Positions 563 through 60,000 of a DNA stretch of 64,000 nt are shown here, piece by piece (within the stretch, counting starts at the first letter, position 1; each line of letters opens with the position of its first letter). The position numbers were made by a program, and so were the translations under genes. Source of the stretch: Octopus bimaculoides (Eukaryota); contig NC_068983.1 in assembly GCF_001194135.2 (NCBI RefSeq), positions 110,336,767-110,400,766 of the forward strand, written 5' to 3'. The notes beneath the pieces were generated by a model that was not told the DNA's origin, made no database searches, and saw nothing but the letters and a program-made list of their open reading frames with translations.

Positions 563-1590
563 TTATGTCGTCAAATATGAAATCTATAGTAAGGTATATG
601 GTAAACTTTGACAGCTGCTCATTTTGCCTTATTAATCTTTGACAACCTTGTTTTTTTGTGTGAGAAAGCTGACACATCTATTTCTTTATTCAAACGAATT
701 TTGCGCTTTATAGAGTATTTATAAATCGTATTTATAGGTCGGTAATTCGCACAGTTTTGAAATATTAGTTAATGGAGTATTTCATTCTAATGGAGTATTT
801 CATTCGACACGGCAGACTGTATCTAACTGGTTTGAAAAATTTCATTCTGGTAACTTTGACCTCGCAAAAGAGCAACGCAGTCGACCAGAAACAAAGGTGG
901 ATAACAACAAACTGAAAGCCACCGTCGAGTCAGATCCATCTCAAAGCGTCCGTGAATTTTCGTTGATGTTTGGTGTTAGCAAGCAAACAATATTGACTCA
1001 CCTAGTTCAAATCGGTAAAATGAAGAAGTTGGATAAGTGGGTTCCACATGAACTCAATGAAAATCAGAAACAGCAACGTTTAGAAACCTGCATTATGCTA
1101 CTTTCTCACCACAAAAATGAATCATTTTTGAATGAAATGGTAACATGTGATGTGAAATCGATCCAATACAACAACCGTAAACATTCAGCACAATGGTTGG
1201 ACAAAGGCGAGCCACCAAAACACAGTCCAAAAAGCAAAATTCATCACAAGAAGCTGATGGTGTGTGTTTGGTTGTCTGGCGCAGGTGTGATTAATTATGA
1301 TTTCATCAGACCTGCCTCATCAATCACGGCCGACGTATACTGCAGCCAACTGGACTAAACGATGTAGAAACTTACAAAAGACAGCCTAGATTAGTCAACA
1401 GATCCACTCCTATTTTATTGCAAGACAACGCCAGACCGCACATCGCAAAAACGATATAGGCGAAACTACAGGAGTTGGAGTTGGAAGTTCTCCATCATCC
1501 ACCATACTCATCTGATTTTGTCCCCACTGACTATCACTTCTAGAATTTTTGATAGGAAAAATATTTAATTCCGAAGCTACTGTAAAACTA
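563..1590 (+). mobile_element. Mariner (DD34D) transposon, left TIR plus degenerate transposase, 3'-truncated
   Basis: Starts at a (TA)n run. ORF 897-1358 has WVPHEL and VTCD motifs. Downstream frames give QDNARPH and HPPYSSDFVPTDYH. Confidence 0.9.
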
Positions 1591-10840: not shown

Positions 10841-11629
10841 ATGTATATTTAAACAACTTCCATAAAAGACTAATCAATGCCGATAGCCAGTTTAGAATAA
10901 AGAAGTCAAAGATTATAAATCATTAGCTTTAATTAAAAGGATGAGAGAAAGATTTAATTTAAAATGCGTAAATTTGTCTTTGAAGCGTGTGATTTAGTAA
11001 GGAACAATTTCAGTTCTCGAAAAATGTTTTTACGGCTCACTTGAAACTATTAAGTACATATAGACGATATATTTGACTATTAGTATTCCGTCGTTAATGA
11101 TGTTGCTAAGATCCACTATTAGTATATCTTGCACGTCCAGTATCCACCCAAAAACGAATAATGCTAGACATGAAACATCAAACATATCATCAAGATATTT
11201 GATATTTGCAAGTTACTATTAGTTTGAAACATTTTTAGAGAAATGGTAAGAAATATTTATTTTCAACGTGCGAAGATTGTCAATAAATACAGAACTGACG
11301 AAGTCTGGGTATTTGAATTTAATATCTTCCCGTGAAGCACAGCCATGCTTGCTATATCATTCAAAAATATTTTTTCGTCGTATCGTTCGATTATATCCTT
11401 GTTAGATTTCTCCCTTCTTGTATATTTTCTTTCCTATTTGATATCCTGAGGCAGGACGTGATTTTCATGTCCGACAACGACCAAAAATATCTTTACTTGC
11501 GTTATATATATTTGGCTTTTCTTGAAAACATAAGCTCCAGGCTCAAGAATACCCTGAACGTAAAATTTTATCTATGCTGCTTCTATAATTAGTTTTCTCT
11601 GTGTAATGCTATTCAATCACTTAGCAGAT

Positions 11630-16730: not shown

Positions 16731-19100
16731 TTGTAGCCGTGAGTAGTAAAGTACGCAAATTATTAATGCAGTTGTATAGACCACATAAGTCCCGAATGAG
16801 TAAGCTTGTTCAAAAGCATAATAATCGTGACCAACCCGTTATTTGCTTATGTGGATGGAATACATTCGGTTATATAGTGTTGAGTACCATATAACCGAAC
16901 ATGCCAGGACTTTGTTTTTAAATATTAGGACGTAATTTGCAGGAGTACGTAGATGCCCCATCGTTGTGTTTGTTGTAGGTGCTTGTTACACTCCAACTTG
17001 AAAGAATTTTGGGAATATCAATAAAGATGACAGGTAGTTAGTTTGTCAAACAGTTCTTTACTCATGGTATTTTTAATTGGTTTCCATTCGTATAGGTATT
17101 GAGAGAGGAAAGACGGAACCACGAATTCTCTTTGTCTCTAACCATTAGTTCGGTTTTCTTTTAAGCTACCTAGCTGTATGTCAGTAACCATGACCAGATT
17201 TCTAAACATGTTTGTTCGATGACATCAATGATGAACTGATAAAATATTATTGACAGCTTATAAAGACAACCTACTTGGAAATCAATTAATCTGTATCATC
17301 GGACTGCTGTTGCCTTATAAATGAAAGCGTAGTGAGGATAGGCATCTTGACAAAAAATTATTCTTGGTGCTTGCAACAGAACGAGCTCTACTTCAATATC
17401 AGTAGGTGTTACTAGATCGTCCCGCATTAGTTCAGGCCAAGAAGAAAGAGCTCCATGGTGAATATTGTAGCATAAGTAGTAAAGATATAATGGCTCTGAG
17501 ATCCCATGCCATTTACTTGCCGTTAGCAATTTGGATAAGCGTATTGATATTACTGCTGCTCTAGAACCAAATTATTTCTAAGGTGATTCACAGATAGCTG
17601 TAGGTTTGCAAAATCAAAAGGGGATTGAGTACATACTGAAAGAGTGAGGAAGATGGAAGAAAGGAAGGTAAAAAAATATACAACTAAAAGAGCCGGACAA
17701 CTAATGCAGGTAGAAGTTAGAAGAAGAATATAAGCATAGAAATAGATGAGTTAGCCAAATATGTTAAGATACAAAATAATTTTCCATAACATTATTTACA
17801 TTATTTACAATTGACGGATATTTGTCCTCCAGTCTCCATCAGGTGTCTTGGGGAAATTTCGAACATGGGTTCTCATTCCTAAGGTATTTTTCCTAAGAAT
17901 CTTCCTAAGATTCACAAGGATAGTATTCCATTAAGACCTATAGTGAGCTGCAGAGGATCAGCATGTCATCTACCTACCCGCTTCCTTGTGGATATAATCA
18001 GTCCATTAGCAGGAAAGTCAACATTGTACATGAAGAATTCCATCCACTTCAGAGAATTGATCAAGGATACCCCTATTGAATCCAGCCAGATGGTGAGTCT
18101 AGATGTGATGTGATAAATTTGTGCACCAAAGTCCCAACTGGAGAAGCACTATCGGTGATTCAAGAAAGACTAGTGACAGACGCCCATCTAAAGAACGCAC
18201 AATAAGAAACTTGATGAAAATGTTGACCTTCTGTGTAGAAACTACCTACTTCAGTATGGACACTGATATATATCGACCAGAGGGGCGGTTAGCTATGGGT
18301 TCGTCATTATCGCCGGCAATAGCCAATATATACATGGAATACTTTGAGAATTTGGCTTTAGGATCAACACCGCTGAAACCAACTCTATGGCTGCGATATG
18401 TTGATGACACCTTCATACTCTGGCCCCACCAGGAAGATGTCCAAGTGCCGTTAGATAATGAGAACTCAATTGATCAAGAAGAAATGATCAAGTTCAGTAA
18501 CAATCTATTAAGCAACAATTACCACACAAGCAGACTCTCCACTCCAATTAGGAAGAAAAGAGGGGATGAAACCGATAAACTGTCCACAGTCTGTCTATCC
18601 TATGTGAAAGGCATCTCGGAAAAGATACAAAGGATATGCAGCCCATATGACACCAGGACAGTATTCAAAAGTAATACAACACTTCGCAAATATCTCCTTC
18701 GAGTAAAACCACTAATAGAAGAGAATATGACTAAGAACTGCGTGTACTCCATCCCATGTAGCTGTGGTAGGTTATACAAATGTGAAACAATTCGCCCCCT
18801 CAAAATAAGGATGGAGGAACATCGCAAAGCCGTAACACTGGGAAATATTGATAAATCGAGTATAGCTTATCATGTATAGAAACATGGAGACCACCTCCCC
18901 CTGTGGGATGAAGTTAAAATAATAGACATAGAACACCATTGGAAAATACAAAAACTAAAAGAAGCAGCACATATGCCAAGACACATGAGCTTCCTAAGCA
19001 GACCAAGTGCAGATATGAACAGCATATGGGAACCGGTATTAAGGAAGAATAGGAGAATATTAGATTTATAAGCCCTAACATTCACTCCATAATTGCCCAC

Positions 19101-19165
19101 GGGCATATGGCGTAATGGTTAAGAGCGCGGGCCACTAACACCAATATTCTGAGTCTGATTCCAGC
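19101..19165 (+). promoter_or_regulatory. tRNA-like Pol III promoter cassette within the PLE tail
   Basis: A-box tggcgtaatgg (19108-19118) and degenerate B-box gagtctgattcc (19151-19162) at tRNA-like spacing. It does not fold as a complete tRNA. Confidence 0.6.
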
Positions 19166-19188
19166 TGAATAATAACAACAACAACAAC

Positions 19189-19252
<64 letters not shown>

Positions 19253-19269
19253 TTTCGAAATTTCCCCAA

Positions 19270-19315
19270 GACACCTGATAAATGCTGGAGGGTATATCAG
19301 CCGAAACGTTGTGTT
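19270..19315 (+). ncRNA. Minimal type I hammerhead ribozyme (PLE pseudo-LTR), G8A-mutated in this copy
   Basis: Stem I gacac/gtgtt, core CTGATAA, stem II gctg-gagggtatat-cagc, GAAA, palindromic ACGT stem III, cleavage triplet GTT (19308-19310). Confidence 0.75.
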
Positions 19316-19899
19316 AGCATCAAACAAGATGAGGACAAATATCTGTCAATTGTAAATAATGTAAATAATGTACATAATTTCTCATCTCTTAAATATAGAA
19401 CTGAATTTTCAGTAAGTAAAGAAAGGTAATACCACGTAATATAAGGTTGAGGTAAGAAATATCTTACTGTGAGAAACATCTGATTTAAGTTAACATGTTG
19501 GAAAAGTGACTGACGCTGAACGAACGCGCGTATGACGTAAGAGGCTGAATATATCCAACGAATGGACAGCAGTTAGAGCCGGATAGTGGTAGACAGGAGA
19601 TGGAAAACCAATGCATATTCATAGACAGGTTTGTGAGAGATAATTGTAATATTTTAATATAAATTGATTCATTACTGTGGGAGACAAATTGAAAATGAGG
19701 TAGGCTCAATTCATGTAAGGCCGGGCTACGTACGGAAATGCTGAATTTCCATGGGAAAAGCCTGTGGTGGCGAAGGGTTTAAATTTGTAGAGGCGAATCT
19801 AAAATATTAATAAGAGAAGTGTAGTCCGCTGGAAGCATTGTAGTTCAGAATTATAAGAAAAGGAACATAAAGAAAGCGTCTAATAATGCAGAAAGTTTT

Positions 19900-37200: not shown

Positions 37201-37299
37201 TTTCACATATTTGTCTCCTTTTCATCAGTTACTAGAAAATATTCCTGATTTTGTGCTCCACCAGAGTTCACTTATTTCGCTTTATTCAACGCTAATATA

Positions 37300-37550
37300 T
37301 TGGGTTGATGCATAATTATCGCGGCTTTTTTTCAACAAATTTTATTCAACAAAAACAATAACAATATGTAACAAAAACATCTTTAAATGATTATTCCGGA
37401 GCATTTTCACCATCTAATCTAATTACTGCTTTCCATTTGTTTGGCAAACGGTCAGACCGTCATTTAAAGATGTTTTCGTTAAATATTACTATTGTTTTTG
37501 TTGAATAAAATTTGTTGAAAAAAAGCTGCAGTAATTTTGTACCAACCCAA
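37300..37550. mobile_element. Mariner-derived MITE, ~90-bp TIRs, TA target duplication
   Basis: TA-ttgggttgatgcataattatcgcggctttttttcaacaaattttattcaacaaaaacaata...atctttaaatga is mirrored by tcatttaaagat...caacccaa-TA. Confidence 0.9.
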
Positions 37551-37599
37551 TATAATGGTTCATCAGGAGGATCAGAAAAAAGACATCTTGTCCAGGAAG

Positions 37600-40585: not shown

Positions 40586-42946
40586 CACTGGTCTGCATTT
40601 GGGAATTTTTTAAATATCTATTCGTAGATGCGATGTTACATATTCTTGGGTTGCTGATTTTAAATATCTAAACCATTTTGCCCTGTCACATAAAGGTGTT
40701 GAATAAAATACAAATTAATAATAATAAAATATGGGAATGTTTAAATTGTCGCTTTATTAAAAGCAAGTAATCAAGGAAAAGCACATTCTGTTAGTTTTAA
40801 GAACATATCTTTTCCAAATCAACATGAAATGAACCACCTTCATCATGAAATTAATCAGAATTATCAACATCAAACCGAACGAATGTATGAAATATGCTCC
40901 TAATGGTTAGCCTATATATTGTTTGAAAGGAAGGAGGAACCCTTTGATTTCCACTTGTGTTGTGCATCGAGACCATCACGTTTCAATGACCAGCAGTAAT
41001 CCGATATCATTCTGACATCCCATTTGCTCAGGTATCGGGTTTGCATGGTGCAAATGTCTTGATGGAACCGCTCCTCTTGTTCCTCACTGTAGCCCGCACA
41101 ATTCTTGAGAAAATAGTAAAGATGCAAGTGCAAAAATACATTTTCACACTCATTCTAAACGCAAGTTGTTGGAAACTTGATATCGGGTCTTGGATCGTCT
41201 TTTCAGACTCTGGGGAGCGGCAGCTTCGTTTTGAACGAGCTTTTTGAAGGAAAACCTGGCATTCACTTCGACACCTGCTAATGCTTCCTTAAAATCCTTT
41301 TCCTCATCAATTCCCAAATATGAGGGCATACAAAGATTCCTGCTTTTAGCTTGCCTTCACTAATACGAGGAAGCTTTGACTCCAGGCACTTGAAAAGAAC
41401 TCCATTCTTGTTCAAGGCCCCCGCAAAATTTTTCAGAAGCCCTAATTTGATGTGGAGTGGTGGNNNNNNNNNNNNNNNNNNNNNNNNNNNNNNNNNNNNN
41501 NNNNNNNNNNNNNNNNNNNNNNNNNNNNNNNNNNNNNNNNNNNNNNNNNNNNNNNNNNNNNNNNNNNNNNNNNNNNNNNNNNNNNNNNNNNNNNNNNNNN
41601 NNNNNNNNNNNNNNNNNNNNNNNNNNNNNNNNNNNNNNNNNNNNNNNNNNNNNNNNNNNNNNNCAAAACGACTCGTTTCCGGGTAAAAATCTGGTTCTTG
41701 GTAGCGAGTCGTTTTGTTAATAGTGGTGGCTGTCTGCCCTACTATCCCAAAGACACAGAAAACAGGGATACATAGTGTAGCCCTCTTGAAGATCAACTAC
41801 GAGAGCAATAACTTTTAAATCACCACAAATGAGAAAATTGTGATTATGGTCCTTGATTGCAATTATTACTGTCTTCATATTTTCGTAAGTTTCTGGCATT
41901 TAGACACTTTGGCCAAATGGCAGAGATGCAACTATATTGCCATTGTAGAGAAGAACAGCCTTTAAATTTCTGTTAGAAGAATCAATAAAGAGCCTACATT
42001 CATCTGCTTTGCATGACATCCCCATGTGTTCGATAAGGCCAGAAATATTCGAACAGAAAACTAAAGAATCTCCTTTCTCAAAGAACTGAGTTCATTCGGC
42101 TTTACGATGACGGTACCAAGTGAATGTTGTTGCAGGAGCTAGAAGATTGTGTTCCTGCAGTCTAGAGCCAAGTAACTGTGCACTCTCTTTTAGAAAGTTA
42201 AGGTCTCTAATCAGGTCACTGAGCTCAACTTGGTGGAAGAATTTGTGATAGTTATTTGTTGGTGGCTCATAGCCTACTTCCAACACATTAGTATCACTAA
42301 TATCAGACTCTGGTGAAATGAAATTTCCCGTGTCTCAGGTGGCACAGGTACAGGAATATTATCTGAGTGCGGAACAGGCCTTATTGCTGAAGGAATATTT
42401 GGGTATATTTAGCTATTTTAGTCATACAAATGTAGCAGTCATAATGGCTCATCTGTTCCCACCATACCATTGGTACTCCAATGGACATGCATTTAAGTTT
42501 TCCAAATGACCACATTTGAAGCTTACTGATGCAACTCTCGCAGGCTTTATGATATGCAAATGGTTTGTCCTGGTCTCCCAGTTTGCAGCCAAAATAAGCT
42601 AAATAGCAGCGCTTCAACAAAGGAGTAATACTACTCTGGGAATCTGAAGGGGTGAATTGCCCGCAGACATAGCAGAATATATCTGGTGAATTGATGCAGC
42701 CTGTAGACATATACATAGACTGAAAATAAAGAACAATATATTTGATTTAACATTTAGGTTAATATAAGGTAAACATTTTAATTGATCATTTACTTGTTAT
42801 ACAAAAAAAAGAGAAAAGTAACGTCTCCGTATAACTTGACAATCTGATGTAATAGAGATGGATAAAAACACAATGACTCATTATTTTTCATATATATTCA
42901 GAAAAATATACCATAGAGCCAATAAAAAAAATCATGCAGACCAGTG
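40586..42946 (-). mobile_element. Full-length Chapaev3-like (CMC superfamily) DNA transposon with disrupted transposase
   Basis: 13-bp perfect TIR CACTGGTCTGCAT at both ends with TAA duplicated on both flanks. Transposase fragments: FCYVCG..YFGCKLGDQDK, ELSDLIRDL, ICGDLKV..CFLCLWDSR, PPLHIKLGL, ERFHQDI..DYCW.L.RD. The superfamily assignment is from recalled TIR/TSD rules (CAC termini, TWA TSD). Confidence 0.8.
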
Positions 42947-50643: not shown

Positions 50644-51911
50644 TTAGTTTGTCAAGAAAGTTCTTGCGGAATTGTTAATTTTGGTTTTAAATGATGTATT
50701 TTCAAATTAATTTTCGTTAAATTACTTTGACTTTATATACCATTTTAAAGTCCGTTTTTCGCTCTATCTAATCGCGTTACTCTTTTTCTTTTCGTATAAT
50801 TAGGTCATTATTTCTGGACGTTGAATACAACATGGACAAAAAGTAGATTCGCACAATTATCTTATTCCAGTTCAAGCTAGGCTGAAAAGCTGCTGAAACA
50901 GCTCGCTATATCAACGACACGTTTGGCCCAGGAACCACTAATGAAGGTACAGCGGTGATGAGAGTCTTGAAGATAATAAGCGTAGTGGTAGGCCATCGGA
51001 TGTTGACAACGATCAACTAAGAGCCTTAGTGGAAGCCAATCCACGCACAACTGTTCGAGAGCTTGCTTCTAAATTAGACGTAACGCACACGACAATTTCC
51101 AACTACTTGAAAGAGATTGGAAAAACAAAAATACTTGAGAAATGGGTGCCGCACGAATTGAACGACAACCCCCCCAAAAAACTCCGTTTTGAAGCGTCAT
51201 ATTCCCTTCTTTTATGCAACAAGAACGATCCGTTTCTCAACCGGATTGTGACTTACGATGAAAGGTGGATTCTTTACGNNNNNNNNNNNNNNNNNNNNNN
51301 NNNNGCTCAGTGGTTGGACGCCGATGAAGCTCCACGGCACTTCCCGAAGCCAAAGTTGCACCAAAAGAAGGTCATGGTGACTGTTTGGTGATCTGTGTCC
51401 GGTCTCATCTATCACAGGTTTTTGGATCCAGGTGAAACCATTACAGCGAAGTACTGTCAGGAAAATGGATGAAATGCATAAAAAACTCCGACAACAACAG
51501 CTAGCATTGGTCAACAGAAAAGGACCAATTTTTCTCCACGACAACGCTCGGCCGTACGTCACACAACTGACCCTGCACAAGTTGAACGAATTGGGCTACG
51601 AAACTCAGTCTTATCCGTCATACTCACCCGACCTCTCGCCTACCGACTACCACTTTTTTAAGCATCTCGACAACTTCCTGCGTGTGAAATGCTTCAAAAA
51701 CCAAGACGATGCCAAACACGCCTTCAACGACTTCATCGCCTTAAAAACGCAGGATTTTTTATGCTACTGGCATAAATAAACTTGTTTCGCGTTGGCAAAA
51801 GTGTTTTGATTCTGATGATGTTTATTTCGATTTATAATGTTTTGTTTCAGCCGAGATATGTGCATCTGAATTTAAAGATTAAAAACTGCAAGGACTTTCT
51901 TGACAACCTAA
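50644..51911 (+). mobile_element. Near full-length mariner (DD34D) with both TIRs, transposase disrupted
   Basis: TIR ttag(t/g)ttgtcaagaaagt(t/c)cttgc at both ends. WVPHEL, VTYDERW, LHDNARP and YSPDLSPTDYHFF motifs. Has stops and frameshifts. Confidence 0.93.
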
Positions 51912-54254: not shown

Positions 54255-54569
<315 letters not shown>

Positions 54570-55745
54570 TTGACAAACAATAGACCATCTCTTGTATATG
54601 GATGACATAAAGATTTCCCTAAAAATATTATGGAACAGAGAAACCTTCTAAAGATTGTCCATAGTTTCAGCAAGGACATTGGGATTAGTGTGGGGTTGGA
54701 CAAATGTGCCAAAATGACACTGAGAATAGACGAATTAATCAGCACTGAAAATGCTGCACTTGACATAGACACGAAATCATAAAATTAGTCCACAATAGTC
54801 CATGAGAATATCTAGGTGTAGATGAATTAGCTAAAATACAACGCACAGAAATGAAAGAGAAATTAGGAGAGAGTTTTACAGAAGAGCTAGACTAATATTA
54901 AACACTGAACTGAATGCTAAAAATAAGATAATAAGGTTAAACACGCTCGCAATACTAGTCATAAATTACAACGTAAATACAATAACCTTGAAGATCAGTA
55001 AATTGAGAAACTTAGAAGACCGAGTAAACTATTAACAGCATACCGAAGTTCCCACCCCAAAGCAGACGCACACAGAATATATGTACCCTGCTCAGAAGGA
55101 CGCCGTGGCCTGACATAGATAAAGAACTGTTATAAAATAACACTTGGACTAGAAAAGTACTTAGAAACAAAAAAAAAAAAGTGGAAGAGTACTCTATGAA
55201 GTAAAGCAACACGAGAAAAAACTCCTTTCTTTATACACAGAATTGGAGAAATTGTCAAAGTACAAAGACCTCGAAATTAAAGTATTCAAGGTGAGGAGCA
55301 TGAAAGTGAAAACAATACCAGTAATGATTGGATCATTGAGCATGATAAAAAACATATGAATAAAAACGTAGAAACTATAACTGGATCCTCAACAAAAAAA
55401 AAGAACCGTGCTAGGAACAGCCTACATACTACGCAAGACACTATCAATTCAATAATACAACTTAAACAAGACAATCCACAGTCACAGTACACACTCTATA
55501 CAACAGATACCCAACGAAATAAACTACCATCAGCAAGCCGTATAGCCAAGGCATTGCACAAACAACACAATACAAAGCACTAATACAACAAAAGACTGCA
55601 TCACACCTCATAATAAAAGAAACTGACGAAATACAATACCGGGAAGAGTTTTCACACTTCCAACAAGACAAAAGAACACACCCCAACTACACGGAGGTGT
55701 AGCATGTGATGCAGTAGAAATTTGCCTGAAACTACTAAAAGTTGA
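54570..55745 (+). mobile_element. 5'-truncated, internally deleted Dong LINE between (AAT)n and (TAC)n
   Basis: LVYG/DDIK, FSKDIGISVGLDKCAKMTL, YLGVDE, EKLSKYKDLEIK and GTAYILRKTLSIQ*, then the 3' UTR. Confidence 0.85.
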
Positions 55746-55747
55746 CT

Positions 55748-55754
55748 GCTACTG

Positions 55755-55815
<61 letters not shown>

Positions 55816-55816
55816 A

Positions 55817-55880
<64 letters not shown>
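55748..55880. repeat. (TAC)n with internal (TGC)n
   Basis: Direct reading. Confidence 0.97.
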
Positions 55881-55881
<1 letters not shown>

Positions 55882-56458
55882 AGATCAAAGCTCCTTCCCG
55901 AATCACAGGCGTGGTAATTGTTCGTAGCAAGATTACTTATTTTTGCTTGCTAAGTGGACTGCAGGAACGTGAAATGAAGTTATTTGTTAAAAAAAAAAAG
56001 ACATTCAGCGGTTCATTAATTGAAACTACAATCTTACGACAATGTGCACAAAACCTTAAGCACTAAACAACAAGAACAAGCACAGCAATAATAAAAAGGA
56101 TATGATTTGGGAGATGGAGTGGGAGTGGTTAACCACGTACTCTACATGAACAATTTAAAGCTTTATGGGGAAAATGAAGATCAACTTGGCACACTGGTGA
56201 ACACAGCAACAATTTTCAGTAATTATAGAGACAAGAAATTTAGTATCAATTAACGCACCATTTTCATACCAAAGAGGGGAAAGGTAAAGCAGAGTCAAGG
56301 ACTTAAACTGGGAGAAAGTCAGGAATACAATTATTTGGGATGTCATTATAAGTCCGAATGTTTGATGCACGTTCGAAATGGGAAACAAGTTACTCACTGC
56401 GTTTCATCACGGAGAATAGAACACGCTTGTTGGCAATTGGTGTGTATACACTTAGCTC

Positions 56459-56553
56459 AGCTCGCAGCGCCATCTTCCAAGACTGTGAAATGTTAACATT
56501 TCGAAGTAGTTGTCTCATCGGTCACAGACTCTAAGCAGACGGCACTGCAAGCT
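56459..56553 (-). ncRNA. Type I hammerhead ribozyme with extended stem I (retrozyme copy 1)
   Basis: Minus strand: agcttgcagtgccgtct/agatggcgctgcgagct 17-bp helix, internal loop, ctgtga/tcacag, core CCGATGA, weak stem II gacaactacttc, GAAA, palindrome ATGTTAACAT, triplet ATT. Confidence 0.75.
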
Positions 56554-56909
56554 AATTTTAAGAGATTACCTCTGTTATGCTTTTCTAGTGACCGTACGTT
56601 GAGTGTCAGCGCTATACGGCAGCTCACCCTACGTAAATTACGGAGGTGTTTTGCTAAGCAGTGACAACAGAAATTGCAATGTTATTGTCAGTTCGAATAT
56701 GCTTGATGCACCATGACCAAACGCAGTGAGTAGCTTGTTCCCCAATTCGAACGTGCACCAAGCATATTCGGACGGATAATAACATTGCACTTTTACTTAT
56801 CACTGGTTAGCGCTCCTTCTCCGTAATGTACTTAGAGTGAACCTCTGTATAGTGCTGCTAGTCATTCTACGGTGTCTGGAACAGCATAACAGAAGGGATC
56901 TCTTAATTT

Positions 56910-57031
56910 AGCTCGCAGTGCTGTCTACTTAGTTTCTGTGATCGATGAGACAAGTACTCCAAACGATGAAGAGACAACTACTCAGAAATGTTAACATCTC
57001 ACAGTCTAGGTAGATGGCGTTGTTGCGAGCT
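56910..57031 (+). ncRNA. Type I hammerhead ribozyme with extended stem I and partial core duplication (retrozyme copy 2)
   Basis: agctcgca/tgcgagct, ctacttag/ctaggtag and ctgtga/tcacag pairings. TCGATGA...ACGATGA duplicated core, GAAA-TGTTAACAT, triplet ATC at 56996-56998. Confidence 0.72.
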
Positions 57032-60000
57032 GATCTAGGTGTATACACACCATTTATTAACCAGCGAGATATATTCTCCATGACAAAACGAAATAAGTAG
57101 CTTGTTCCCAATTTCGAACGTGCCTCAGCATATTTGGATTGATAATAACATTGCAATTTCACTTGTCACCGCTTAGAGCTACCCCTCCATAACAATTATT
57201 TGGACATTTTGGAATCAGAGAAAGGAAGAAAACCATTTCAAAGAAGTACTTCAAAAGGATCAAATTGATACTGAAATCTAAGTCAAATTCTGGAAAGTTG
57301 GTAAAGGCAACACATTGAAGTACTCTATCAATTATGAGATGTGTGACAGGTCTTGTCAATTTGAATGGAGAGGAACAGCAAGATATTGATCGAAACACTC
57401 GGAAAATAATGTCAGTGTACAAGGCGTTGCATAAAAGTGAAGATGTGTAGTGTCTGTGTAGGAAATGTGAAAACAGAGGAAGGGGGTTGATCATTATGGA
57501 GGATTGTGTGAGCATGTACGTTCAAATCGCAAACACGAAATCTCTATAGAATTGCTACGAGCAGTAAGCAATACTTGGGGAAGGAATAGCAAAAGATGAA
57601 GTATTTGAAAAGAGAATGTAAAGGCACATGGAAAAATATATATACGCACAGTTTATGAATAATGCTCGGGCGGGAAGAGGTGAAGGCATTTGTAATTGGT
57701 TGAAAAAGGAAAATCTCAAACAAGGGAGAGAACGATTAAATATAGCTGCTCGGGATCAGGCCCTCGATATAAAGAGCACAAAATGTGGAGCTGGAACCAA
57801 CGTGTTGCCAGTGTGCAGGTTGTTCGATGACCGAAAGTAAACATACTAAGTGAATGTTCCAAACTAGCACAGAAACAATATAAATTTGGAGACGTGATAA
57901 ATTTGCAAAGATCGTCCATTAGCAAATGCATAAGCAGTATTAATTTCCATCATGACTCAATAGGTATGACCATGTACCCAAAAAGTGACTTTGTTTAAAC
58001 ATTTTGGAGATGTTTCTATTCAAATAGATTGCTTGCATGTTTCTTTTGTATTGTTTATACATATGTTGATAGTATTGGACAATGTATATATTTGTTTTAT
58101 ATTATGAAAGAATTTAAACTAATTAATCTGAATAACAATGTCCGATTTATCCATGTTGACACATTTAAAATATTTCATAACACGATACATTAAAATGGTT
58201 CTGTTCATAAATTTTCTTTTTCCAATCATTGATGCGACACCGAATATTCCATCACCCAGAAGAAATTTTGATATGTTTTGAATGTAAATATTTACATGAT
58301 TCAATATAACATGAACTGTCATTTGATATCCTTATAATCACTTCCTCTGAAATTCTTCCTATGTTGAACAAAATATGTTTAATGTCGTTTCTTCGAATTG
58401 TATTCTAGACAGAATGATAACAATGTCTATATCTCATAGTTTTCTTGAGAAATTAATGGCAGGCATGTCATATTGCTTCTAAATATTCGTATATATTTAA
58501 GTGCACTAGAGAGCTTGGATCCTTAAACATAATATTGGATGACATGAAAATATGGAACTCAAAAGCTGATTAATGCATCCATGCTACTCAGTGTCATATT
58601 ACACATGTAAAAACTACAATGAAAGTAGAAATCCTGGTAAATCTAAATTGAATAGTACTGTTCATTGCATGTTATGACAAAATCCTTGTTAACATATAGA
58701 ACTTTAAAATTTTCTCGAGATATTCAAGTTCCTTCTGTATATTTAAAACACGGAATTAATACCAATGTCAGATTATACAAGAGTTATTGGATTGAGTCGA
58801 CTTATATTTCCAAGACTGTGCTTTTATCATTCTAGACTTATTGCTTCTTAATCAATATGTTGTTGTATACCTGCTTACTTTGCTGCAAGTTTAACACAGA
58901 GAATAATATTTAACCCCTAGTGAAGGGATTTCTCTCCTGATGTCGATTTGATCGCATCCCTTATGTAACTAAAAAAAAAAATTACATTGACTTCGTACCT
59001 CTCTGTTGTGCTAAATTAAGTTTTCATACAAACCACTGAAGTACAAATCTGACACAAAGGTTTATTAATTTGATTATATCTCTTCACGAAAGAAATCATT
59101 ATTGATTTATATAAATCAATAACGATACGATACATTCCTATATATCTGAAATGCAGATAATAAAACAATATTCACCACTAATGCAGCATTAATGTTTCAG
59201 TAATAATGAATCACTAACATATAAATATAGAATGTGTGAATAATTGTTACTGTAGGTGATAAGGCCTTCACTGAAATTTTCAAGAAAGCTTCACAAATAA
59301 ACATGTTAATGTAAATTCTTTGAATTGCGAAATTTATAACATATATGCTCGTTATAAATAACTTAGAACTGAGCATATTTTCCGTCTGAAATGGAATTTG
59401 CGCTTTCCACACAGAAATTAATAAAGCAATATATTCATATTACTGAGTTTATTGATATCGCTATATTAAAGCGGTATTCAGTGGTGAAGCCCGTTTGACT
59501 TTTGGTATAATGGAATACTATTGTATCGAACCGCATTTCACAGAAATACAGTAGATATCTATTCACAGGTAGTAGATATTTCAAAAGATAACTAGCACAA
59601 TTCCAAAGCAATTCCAATGTGAATAGCTTGTACAAATAGAAATGGAACATAAGTAAAGGATACTTACATAGAGATTCTCTTATATCTGCATGCTTGCATC
59701 GGATTTTGCGGAATTCTAATTCAAAGCTGTTCACTTATTAAAGGTTTTCATGCGCATTAAAATATGTGAAGAAAATATTTTCACTTGATCTCTATGAGAG
59801 TGTACATGGGTATGAGAATGTGCAAGATGCGTGTATTACGCATGTTTGAGTTGTAACATACATGAATACACATGTATGTGTAAAAAGCCATAAATACATA
59901 TGTTTCATATACACATACATTTGATATACACCATAAACCTATATACACAAACAAAATATTTGCAGTATATACGAATGAAACACAATGATATAAGATATTG

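What the first reader, a model, noticed from the sequence alone, without database searches (positions are those of the whole stretch)
56327..57203. Hammerhead retrozyme-like insertion caught with TSD and 5' inversion inside a LINE
Seen: a non-coding ~341-bp monomer present as ~1.1 inverted copies (56339-56711) plus ~1.3 direct copies (56712-57191), with one type I HHR per monomer. Repeat homology stops at both copies of ACAATTATTTGG, and that 12-mer encodes the (Y)NYL(G) motif of the host Dong RT, whose sequence resumes on the far side. This independently supports a true TSD. Established: tandem 150-400-bp HHR repeats (non-LTR retrozymes; newt satellite 2, schistosome Sm-alpha, coral and mussel repeats) yield circular RNAs and are thought to borrow an RT. 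Long TSDs with 5' inversion typify target-primed reverse transcription with twin priming. Inference: more-than-unit-length cDNA on both arms fits rolling-circle copying of a circular monomer. I do not know whether this family is described in cephalopods.
Basis: partly seen in the sequence, partly recalled or inferred. Interest (0 to 1): 0.92.

Follow-up and report, generated by a model that had tools for sequence, protein, structure and literature searches.

The report
Old Penelope-style tandem/inverted retroposon insertion
An 853-bp piece of a short non-coding repeat was pasted long ago into a dead LINE in an octopus-type genome, as an inverted arm plus a direct arm with a 12-bp target duplication.

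Summary
The structural observation is real. An exact 12-bp duplication (ACAATTATTTGG, 56327-56338 and 57192-57203) flanks 853 bp. These comprise 1.09 inverted units (56339-56711) and 1.31 direct units (56712-57191) of a 341-366-nt non-coding repeat. The joined flanks restore a degenerate LINE RT frame (..EYNYL|DILE..).

The repeat is a family. Two other loci from public read assemblies carry it as direct arrays of at least 3.3 and 1.37 units. One of them has a TSD-like 13/15 repeat.

The copies share two discrete 3' ends 40 nt apart. The window's right end equals the end of L003, and the outer end of its inverted arm equals the end of L006. More-than-unit tandems, an inverted 5' copy, variable TSDs and a 30-40-nt one-sided "tail" are the published signature of Penelope-like element (PLE) integration. 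A PLE in this same window shows that signature.

The claimed hammerhead fails. Neither window copy has a CUGANGA core, none of five family units has a helix II, and Rfam gives no hit. The hammerhead-type fold is disfavoured, and a descriptor that finds the local PLE min-hammerhead finds nothing here.

Verdict: an old, decayed non-autonomous retroposon, most likely PLE-mobilised and retrozyme-like in architecture only. Moderate-to-low interest.

The parts
56327..56338 (.). Left copy of the 12-bp target-site duplication ACAATTATTTGG. It is part of the host codons for (Y)NYL(G).
   Evidence: D7, 100% identity; 1/5000 shuffles reach a shared 12-mer; translation.
56339..56711 (-). Inverted arm. Its reverse complement is unit positions 48-366 followed by 1-80 (1.09 units). 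The outer end lies at the 'short' family terminus ..AACAT. The inner end is 5'-truncated at unit position 48.
56712..57191 (+). Direct arm: unit positions ~7-366 followed by 1-120 (1.31 units). It ends at the 'long' family terminus ..CCTCCATA(A).
57152..57191 (+). 40-nt terminal extension ('tail'), present at the right end and absent from the outer end of the inverted arm.
   Evidence: alignment of ends. Parallel ~35-nt asymmetry in the window's own PLE. Tail described in PMC8557442.
57192..57203 (.). Right copy of the 12-bp target-site duplication.
56483..56527 (-). Hammerhead-like box of the inverted arm: CUGUGA CCGAUGAG ACAACUACUU CGAAA UGUUAACA UU UCACAG. Helices I and III are present, there is C where U4 should be, and helix II is only 2 bp.
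56936..57004 (+). Hammerhead-like box of the direct arm (UCGAUGAG ... AGAAA), disrupted by the 24-nt duplication at 56947-56970.
56451..56558 (-). Long (~30-bp stem) hairpin inside the unit, with the hammerhead-like box as its apical loop (inverted-arm copy).
56905..57039 (+). The same long hairpin in the direct-arm unit.
56095..56338 (+). Host: degenerate LINE reverse-transcriptase fragment upstream of the insertion (..VNHVLYMNNLKLYGENE..EYNYL).
57204..58029 (+). Host LINE fragment downstream of the insertion (..DILESEK.., RNTRKIMSVYKALH.., RGRGLIIMED, CRLF.. Cys motif), carrying frameshifts and stops.

Best explanation
The 853 bp are one ancient insertion of a short (341-366 nt per unit), non-coding, strongly self-paired, non-autonomous retroposon. 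It went in by target-primed reverse transcription of the kind made by Penelope-like elements.

Proposed steps:
1. An endonuclease made nicks staggered by 12 bp in the host LINE. Shown by the TSD.
2. The bottom-strand 3'-OH primed cDNA at the element's 3' end (..CCTCCATAA). Synthesis ran for 1.31 units on a multimeric (or circular) template RNA. The >1 unit and the fixed 3' end are shown; the nature of the template is inferred.
3. The top-strand 3'-OH primed a second cDNA at the alternative 3' terminus 40 nt upstream (..AACAT) and ran for 1.09 units. This gave the inverted arm. The architecture and the reuse of that terminus in another locus are shown.
4. The two 5'-truncated cDNAs were joined with 0-1 nt of microhomology at 56711/56712. 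The junction is read from the sequence; the joining is inferred.

The RT/endonuclease most likely came from an autonomous PLE; this is inferred. The hammerhead-like box is at best a vestige and is not a working canonical ribozyme in these copies. The copy is now about 20% diverged between units and has no evident function.
For: TSD and architecture.

The repeat is a multi-copy family:
- phmmer with a pseudo-ORF of the unit hit ORFs through other copies: P0121 (E=4e-10, 3 stretches) and P0123 (E=9e-5). Their DNA was fetched.
- L003 holds a direct array of at least 3.3 units that ends at unit position 121, the same end as the window's right end.
- L006 holds 1.37 direct units, 5'-truncated at about position 312. 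It ends at ..AACAT, the same as the outer end of the window's inverted arm. It is flanked by a 13/15 repeat.

PLE signature in the literature: partial tandems, an adjacent inverted 5'-truncated copy, variable TSDs, a 30-40-bp one-sided tail, and non-autonomous derivatives that give head-to-tail multicopy insertions (PMC8557442).

PLE in this window:
- A PLE lies at 17789-19407. Its RT...GIY-YIG ORF has 212 homologues, including one from Octopus sinensis.
- It carries an inverted copy of its own 3' end at its 5' side, ending about 35 nt short of the true 3' end.
- The O. sinensis copy shows inverted plus partial-tandem plus body.

The RNA is strongly structured: z = -3.9 and -2.95. Animal retrozymes are argued to be PLE-derived.
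Against: - No sequence similarity was found between the unit and the 3' ends of the PLE copies on hand: the window's own copy and the copies in L001, L002, L010 and L011. No autonomous partner is identified.
- Only three loci of the family were available. The 3' boundary and TSD of L006 are blurred by decay; about 3% of shuffles reach its exact 9-mer.
- L003 and L006 show no inverted arm, though the L003 contig starts inside the array.
- The element ends in ..TAA, so use of a LINE RT cannot be excluded.
- The species of the Logan runs (SRR11869384-94) is unknown.
Confidence: 0.6

Rival explanations
1. The unit is a true non-LTR retrozyme with one type I hammerhead per unit. It self-cleaves and circularises. 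A borrowed LINE (Dong) RT copied the circle by rolling circle, and L1-style twin priming produced the inverted arm.
For: - Unit size, low GC (42.6%), tandem insertion, long TSD and highly self-paired RNA all fit published retrozymes.
- A hammerhead-like box has helix I (90% of cells paired), a short palindromic helix III (80%), GAUGAG and CGAAA in the right order.
- Only 0.9-5.6% of shuffled inserts give such a box.
- One relative (L003 unit 3) has the canonical CUGAUGAG.
Against: - Both window copies have C at U4, so this state is ancestral to the insertion.
- Helix II is absent in all five units: 40% of cells paired across the three posited pairs.
- GAAA is sequestered in the conserved palindrome GAAAUGUUAACAUUUC.
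- The hammerhead-type fold scores -2.6 against an MFE of -10.5 kcal/mol. Local folds have z of about 0.
- Rfam gives no hit in the window, L003 or L006.
- A descriptor that recovers the local PLE min-hammerhead finds nothing in the family on either strand.
- The fixed outer end of the inverted arm argues against arbitrary internal twin priming.
- The heterogeneous units in L003 argue against copying of a single circle.
Confidence: 0.12
2. A LINE-mobilised, SINE-like tandem element without a ribozyme. A non-PLE RT (for example the Dong/R4-type or another LINE of this genome) recognised the element's 3' hairpin, copied a multimeric transcript, and a second priming event on the top strand gave the inversion.
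For: - Octopus genomes hold many active LINE families, including Dong-R4.
- 5' inversions with TSDs are a known outcome of twin priming; this rests on established knowledge of L1.
- The element ends in TAA.
- No PLE partner was found.
Against: - There is no poly(A) or microsatellite tail.
- Tandem more-than-unit insertions, the 40-nt one-sided tail and the reuse of the same terminus by the inverted arm are described as PLE-specific and not seen in LINE TPRT.
- No similarity was found to the LINE fragments in the window.
Confidence: 0.2
3. A DNA-level origin: a foldback/MITE-type DNA transposon with long inverted arms, or a palindromic duplication formed after insertion of a satellite fragment.
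For: The insert is a 72%-identical palindrome over 848 bp flanked by a direct repeat.
Against: - The termini are not symmetric; the right end extends 40 nt further.
- Other family copies (L003, L006) are purely direct arrays with variable 5' truncation and fixed 3' ends, which is a retroposition pattern.
- From general knowledge, a 12-bp TSD is longer than the TSDs of most DNA transposon superfamilies.
Confidence: 0.04

Closest known systems
Non-autonomous derivatives of Penelope-like elements (for example MRC1/non-autonomous Chlamys in Chlamydomonas; PLE pLTR-derived repeats)
   Same: - Integrates as more-than-unit head-to-tail copies.
- Variable 5' truncation and fixed 3' end.
- Optional adjacent inverted 5'-truncated copy.
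- Variable-length TSD.
- One-sided 30-40-nt tail.
- No coding capacity.
- Coexists with autonomous PLEs in the genome.
   Different: No homology was found to the 3' end or pLTR of any PLE sampled here. The unit is very short (341-366 nt). The host is a cephalopod.
Metazoan non-LTR retrozymes (newt satellite 2, Schistosoma Sm-alpha, coral and mussel repeats; Cervera & de la Pena 2020)
   Same: Unit length within 170-400 nt, GC <45%, tandem organisation, TSD >4 bp, highly self-paired RNA, and PLEs as the suspected mobiliser.
   Different: The defining type I hammerhead is not present in canonical form. Helix II is missing in all five units, and the core is mutated in four of five. No expression or circularity data are available.
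L1-type 5' inversion by twin priming
   Same: An inverted 5' segment plus a direct 3' segment inside one TSD, with a junction of 0-1 nt microhomology.
   Different: There is no poly(A). The inverted arm starts at a recurrent element terminus rather than at an arbitrary internal site. Both arms exceed one unit.

Membership tests
Metazoan non-LTR retrozyme | Tandem units of about 170-400 nt, non-coding, low GC | tested here: met
   Units of 341-366 nt. There are 1.09+1.31 units in the window, at least 3.3 in L003 and 1.37 in L006. No codon-position bias: 292/331/278. GC is 42.6%.
Metazoan non-LTR retrozyme | A type I hammerhead ribozyme in every unit | tested here: not met
   No CUGANGA in the insert. 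No Rfam hit at E<=10 in the window, L003 or L006. Helix II has 40% of cells paired. The descriptor with a working positive control gives zero hits.
Metazoan non-LTR retrozyme | Target-site duplications longer than 4 bp | tested here: met
   12/12 in the window; 13/15 in L006.
Metazoan non-LTR retrozyme | Self-cleavage and abundant monomer-length circular RNA | not testable with these tools
   No transcriptome or bench data. It is unknown whether the Logan runs SRR11869384-94 are DNA or RNA.
Hammerhead ribozyme, type I | Conserved core C3 U4 G5 A6 N7 G8 A9 ... G12 A13 A14 | tested here: not met
   Window copies read CCGAUGA and UCGAUGA. Only L003 unit 3 of five units has CUGAUGA.
Hammerhead ribozyme, type I | Three helices around the core (I open, II and III closed) | tested here: not met
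   Helix I 90% and helix III 80% of cells paired; helix II 40%, with the third pair never formed. The hammerhead-type fold is 8 kcal/mol worse than the MFE.
PLE-type insertion (non-autonomous PLE-dependent element) | Partial tandem (pLTR-like) organisation with 5' truncation | tested here: met
   Described in PMC8557442.
PLE-type insertion (non-autonomous PLE-dependent element) | Inverted 5'-truncated copy adjacent to the 5' end | tested here: met
   Window 56339-56711. Absent in L006 and unknown for L003. The same feature occurs in the window's PLE and in the O. sinensis PLE copy.
PLE-type insertion (non-autonomous PLE-dependent element) | 30-40-bp extension ('tail') at one end only | tested here: met
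   The right end extends 40 nt beyond the outer end of the inverted arm. Both termini recur in independent loci. There is a ~35-nt analogue in the window's own PLE.
PLE-type insertion (non-autonomous PLE-dependent element) | Sequence similarity to the 3' end/pLTR of an autonomous PLE | tested here: inconclusive
   No blastn match to the PLE copies in the window, L001, L002, L010 or L011. Only a few of the roughly 30 octopus PLE families were sampled.
L1-type twin priming | Second priming at an arbitrary internal site of a polyadenylated LINE-dependent RNA | tested here: not met
   No poly(A). The outer end of the inverted arm coincides with the terminus ..AACAT used by L006.
Dong/R4-clade LINE (host element) | LINE reverse transcriptase homology around the insertion site | tested here: met
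   tblastn to LINE fragments in L002: E=7e-5 across the junction, and E=4e-6 just downstream of an RVT_1 gene. Pfam itself gives no hit for this decayed copy, and the 5.8-billion-protein search found nothing.
Dong/R4-clade LINE (host element) | Placement in the Dong/R4 clade by RT phylogeny, and a restriction-like endonuclease | not tested
   No reference LINE library was on hand. Only a Cys motif (CRLF..) and the resemblance to the L002 element that carries ..RRPD.. were seen.

The most novel reading that the evidence does not exclude
The family is a genuine cephalopod retrozyme lineage. Its ribozyme would be an atypical hammerhead with a 2-3-bp helix II, sitting at the tip of a 30-bp rod. 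It would still cleave, perhaps as a dimer through the conserved GAAAUGUUAACAUUUC palindrome, and produce ~340-366-nt circular RNAs. This would extend both the host range of retrozymes and the known sequence space of natural hammerheads.
Probability: 0.12. Interest if true: 0.6.

Novelty: new member of a known kind. Interest (0 to 1): 0.3.

Why it matters
The locus is a clean, fully delimited example of a very short non-autonomous element inserted with the complete Penelope-type signature: tandem, inverted arm, tail and TSD. The empty site can be read directly from a host reading frame.

Such loci help work out the still-unresolved PLE integration mechanism. They also help repeat annotators, who usually split such structures or label them 'unknown' or 'satellite'.

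It is also a caution. Retrozyme-like architecture occurs here without a recognisable hammerhead, in line with the view that the ribozyme is dispensable for PLE-type mobility. The copy itself is old, decayed and sits in a dead LINE, so it has no evident biological role.

Tried and rejected
- Rfam at gathering threshold on the whole window, and at E<=10 on the insert, on L003/L006 and on the PLE 3' ends. No ribozyme was found. Caveat: Rfam also misses the canonical-core PLE min-hammerhead in L010, so the Rfam negative alone is weak. I therefore used explicit descriptors with that PLE motif as positive control.
- Word-indexed protein search with the 77-aa pseudo-ORF: no candidates.
- Word-indexed search with the frameshift-corrected host RT: nothing at 1e-5. 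That search was effectively wasted.
- Exact look-up of the window's PLE ORF: not on record.
- Scan of JGI metagenome contigs for a conserved 24-nt family pattern: 0 matches.
- blastn of the family against four cephalopod PLE loci (L001, L002, L010, L011; ~84 kb): no copies and no PLE partner.
- tRNA-derived SINE idea: ARAGORN finds nothing.
- Coding idea, raised by a 207-aa ORF through the L003 array: rejected by the lack of codon-position bias.
- Literature search for the SRR run numbers: none found.
- The ~13-bp TSD I first read for the window's PLE is not significant (a 7-mer, reached by 18% of shuffles), and that PLE's true 3' end lies further out. I dropped that argument.
Full report
**Observation.** The 12-mer ACAATTATTTGG is present exactly twice around the feature, at 56327-56338 and 57192-57203. 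Only 1 of 5000 shuffles of the 30-nt flanks share a 12-mer. The 853 bp in between match their own reverse complement at 71.7% over 848 bp. They resolve into a left arm (56339-56711, 373 nt) and a right arm (56712-57191, 480 nt). The left arm is the reverse complement of about 1.09 units. The right arm holds about 1.31 direct units. The right-arm unit is 366 nt and the left-arm unit 341 nt, because of a 24-nt internal duplication at 56947-56970. Nothing else in the 64-kb window resembles the unit.

**Host.** Removing the insert and one 12-mer gives ..KLGESQEYNYLDILESEKGRK.. in frame. This lies about 60 residues after a degenerate YxDD box (VLYMNN, 56137-56154). The decayed host gives no Pfam hit and no hit in the large protein search. 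However, tblastn against cephalopod contigs fetched later aligns host residues 12-100 with a LINE fragment in L002 at E=7e-5. That stretch spans the junction, and the only gap is one residue after it. Residues 140-185 align with the stretch just downstream of an RVT_1 gene in L002 at E=4e-6. So the host is a LINE RT and the 12-mer is a true TSD. The 'Dong' label was not tested. Dong-R4 LINEs are abundant in Octopus vulgaris (PMC13282606).

**The unit is a family.** A phmmer search of 1.8 billion cluster representatives with the 77-aa pseudo-ORF of the unit found two ORFs that run through other copies: P0121 (E=4e-10, three stretches) and P0123 (E=9e-5). Their DNA was fetched from Logan assemblies of runs SRR11869384-94.
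- L003, read as reverse complement, is a direct array of at least 3.3 divergent units. The contig starts inside the array. The array ends at unit position 121 (..CCTCCGTAA). The window's right arm ends at the same place (..CCTCCATA|A).
- L006 holds 1.37 direct units. It starts at about unit position 312 and ends at ..AACAT (position ~80). It is flanked by ATATAGAAAGTAATA / ATATAGAAAATATTA, a 13/15 match. Its exact 9-mer is reached by 3% of shuffles.
- The ..AACAT end is also exactly where the window's inverted arm ends.

The family therefore has variable 5' truncation and two discrete 3' termini 40 nt apart. In the window each terminus is used once, one per arm. The unit is non-coding: mismatches by codon position are 292/331/278. 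Its GC is 42.6% against 34.2% for the window. It folds far better than shuffles, z = -3.9 and -2.95. The fold is dominated by a ~30-bp hairpin that is kept in all five units.

**Hammerhead test.**
- The insert has no CUGANGA on either strand.
- The only hammerhead-like arrangement is CUGUGA-CCGAUGAG-ACAACUACUU-CGAAA-UGUUAACA-UU-UCACAG (minus strand, 56483-56527). It forms the apical loop of the long hairpin.
- A relaxed descriptor finds it once. 0.9-5.6% of shuffled inserts do as well.
- Its partner in the direct arm reads UCGAUGAG...AGAAA and carries the duplication.
- Across five units from three loci, helix I is paired in 90% of cells, helix III in 80% and helix II in 40%. The third helix II pair never forms.
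- Only L003 unit 3 has CUGAUGA.
- GAAA is part of the conserved palindrome GAAAUGUUAACAUUUC. That palindrome pairs the would-be core with the would-be cleavage site.
- The hammerhead-type fold scores -2.6 kcal/mol against an MFE of -10.5. Local folds are no better than shuffles.
- Rfam reports no ribozyme at E<=10 in the insert or the relatives. Because Rfam also misses minimal PLE hammerheads, I wrote a min-hammerhead descriptor. It recovers the canonical motif in the O. sinensis PLE copy (L010) and, with one mismatch, in the window's PLE. It finds nothing in the family on either strand.

Three independent insertions derive from masters without a helix II. A canonical hammerhead was therefore not needed for mobility.

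**Mechanism.** The published signature of PLE integration has five parts (PMC8557442):
- a partial tandem copy (pLTR);
- often an inverted 5'-truncated copy abutting the 5' end;
- TSDs of variable length;
- a 30-40-bp tail at one end only;
- non-autonomous derivatives that give head-to-tail multicopy insertions.

That paper describes these features as not observed in LINE TPRT. The finding shows all of them.

The same window contains a 5'-truncated PLE at 17789-19407. Its ORF at 18121-18879 has an RVT_1 match and a GIY..CC..YIG motif, CVYSIPCSCGRLYKCET. It has 212 homologues, the only named one from Octopus sinensis. The 3' end of this PLE is repeated in inverted orientation at its 5' side. 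That inverted copy stops about 35 nt short of the true 3' end. The true end is defined by two O. sinensis copies. The O. sinensis locus shows inverted fragment, then partial tandem, then body. So the machinery and its footprint are present locally.

Classical L1 twin priming is less likely. It predicts an arbitrary internal priming site and a poly(A) tail. Here the outer end of the inverted arm is a terminus reused elsewhere, and there is no tail.

The weak point is the partner. No homology was found between the unit and the few PLE 3' ends sampled.

**Template and age.** Both arms exceed one unit, so the template was multimeric or circular. Units within the window are 78-82% identical, against 71-84% to units of other loci. 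Within L003 adjacent units are only 66-74% identical. This does not favour copying of one circle at that locus. If the window's units were identical at insertion, an intact 12/12 TSD has probability of about 0.8^12 = 0.07 (my calculation). That is tolerable, but it also fits a template that was already heterogeneous. On the octopus TE timescale (JC 0.2 is about 56 My for the PLE/LINE wave), the insertion is tens of millions of years old (inference).

**Comparison and novelty.** In architecture this is a non-LTR-retrozyme-like, PLE-type non-autonomous element. It fails the defining hammerhead test, so I do not file it as a retrozyme. Animal retrozymes are themselves argued to be PLE derivatives. 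The papers searched mention no retrozyme or hammerhead repeat in cephalopods. It is therefore a new member of a known kind, old and inert at this locus.

**Caveats.** Only three loci were available. The species and library type of the Logan runs are unknown. The L006 boundaries are decayed. No expression data were available.

Noticed in passing
window 17789-19407: 5'-truncated Penelope-like element on the + strand (RT...GIY-YIG ORF at 18121-18879). An inverted copy of its own 3' end lies at 17789-17863 and stops about 35 nt short of the true 3' end. An (AAT)n tract lies inside its 3' region at 19168-19252.
   Followed up: yes
window ~19270-19320; L010 ~10937-10985: Minimal PLE-type hammerhead in the PLE 3' region. 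It has a canonical core in the O. sinensis copy (GACAC CUGAUGA AA GCUGG..CAGC C GAAAC GUU GUGUU). The window copy is decayed (CUGAUAA). Rfam detects neither.
   Followed up: partly
window 897-1358 and 51029-51779: Two mariner-like transposase fragments (Pfam Transposase_1 and HTH_Tnp_Tc3_2 for the second). The second is split by a short N run.
   Followed up: partly
window 54590-55881: A second, different degenerate LINE RT fragment (IDHLLYMDDIKI.., weak RVT_1 hit) lies directly upstream of the host LINE. It ends in a 137-bp (ACT)n tract at 55745-55881. (ATG)n/(ATA)n tracts at 54402-54569 lie just upstream of its YMDD box.
   Followed up: partly
window ~22.1-22.8 kb, ~41.4-41.7 kb, ~43.95-44.55 kb, ~51.28-51.31 kb, ~61.8-62.1 kb: Runs of N (assembly gaps), several of them next to microsatellites. 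The window comes from a gapped scaffold assembly.
   Followed up: no
window 37296-37390 / 37460-37554: A 95-nt inverted repeat, 89% complementary, with a 69-nt spacer. It looks like a MITE or hairpin element.
   Followed up: no
window 41278-41796 (-) and 42381-42716 (-): ORFs that look like fragments of a transposon-derived protein (..PPLHIKLGLLKNF.. and a Cys-rich N-terminus ..DIFCYVCGQF..), separated by an N run.
   Followed up: no
L003 1193-1816 (locus coordinates): A 207-codon open frame runs through 1.8 units of the non-coding repeat array and was called as a protein in three Logan assemblies. This is a gene-calling artefact, but a useful one: it is how the relatives were found.
   Followed up: yes
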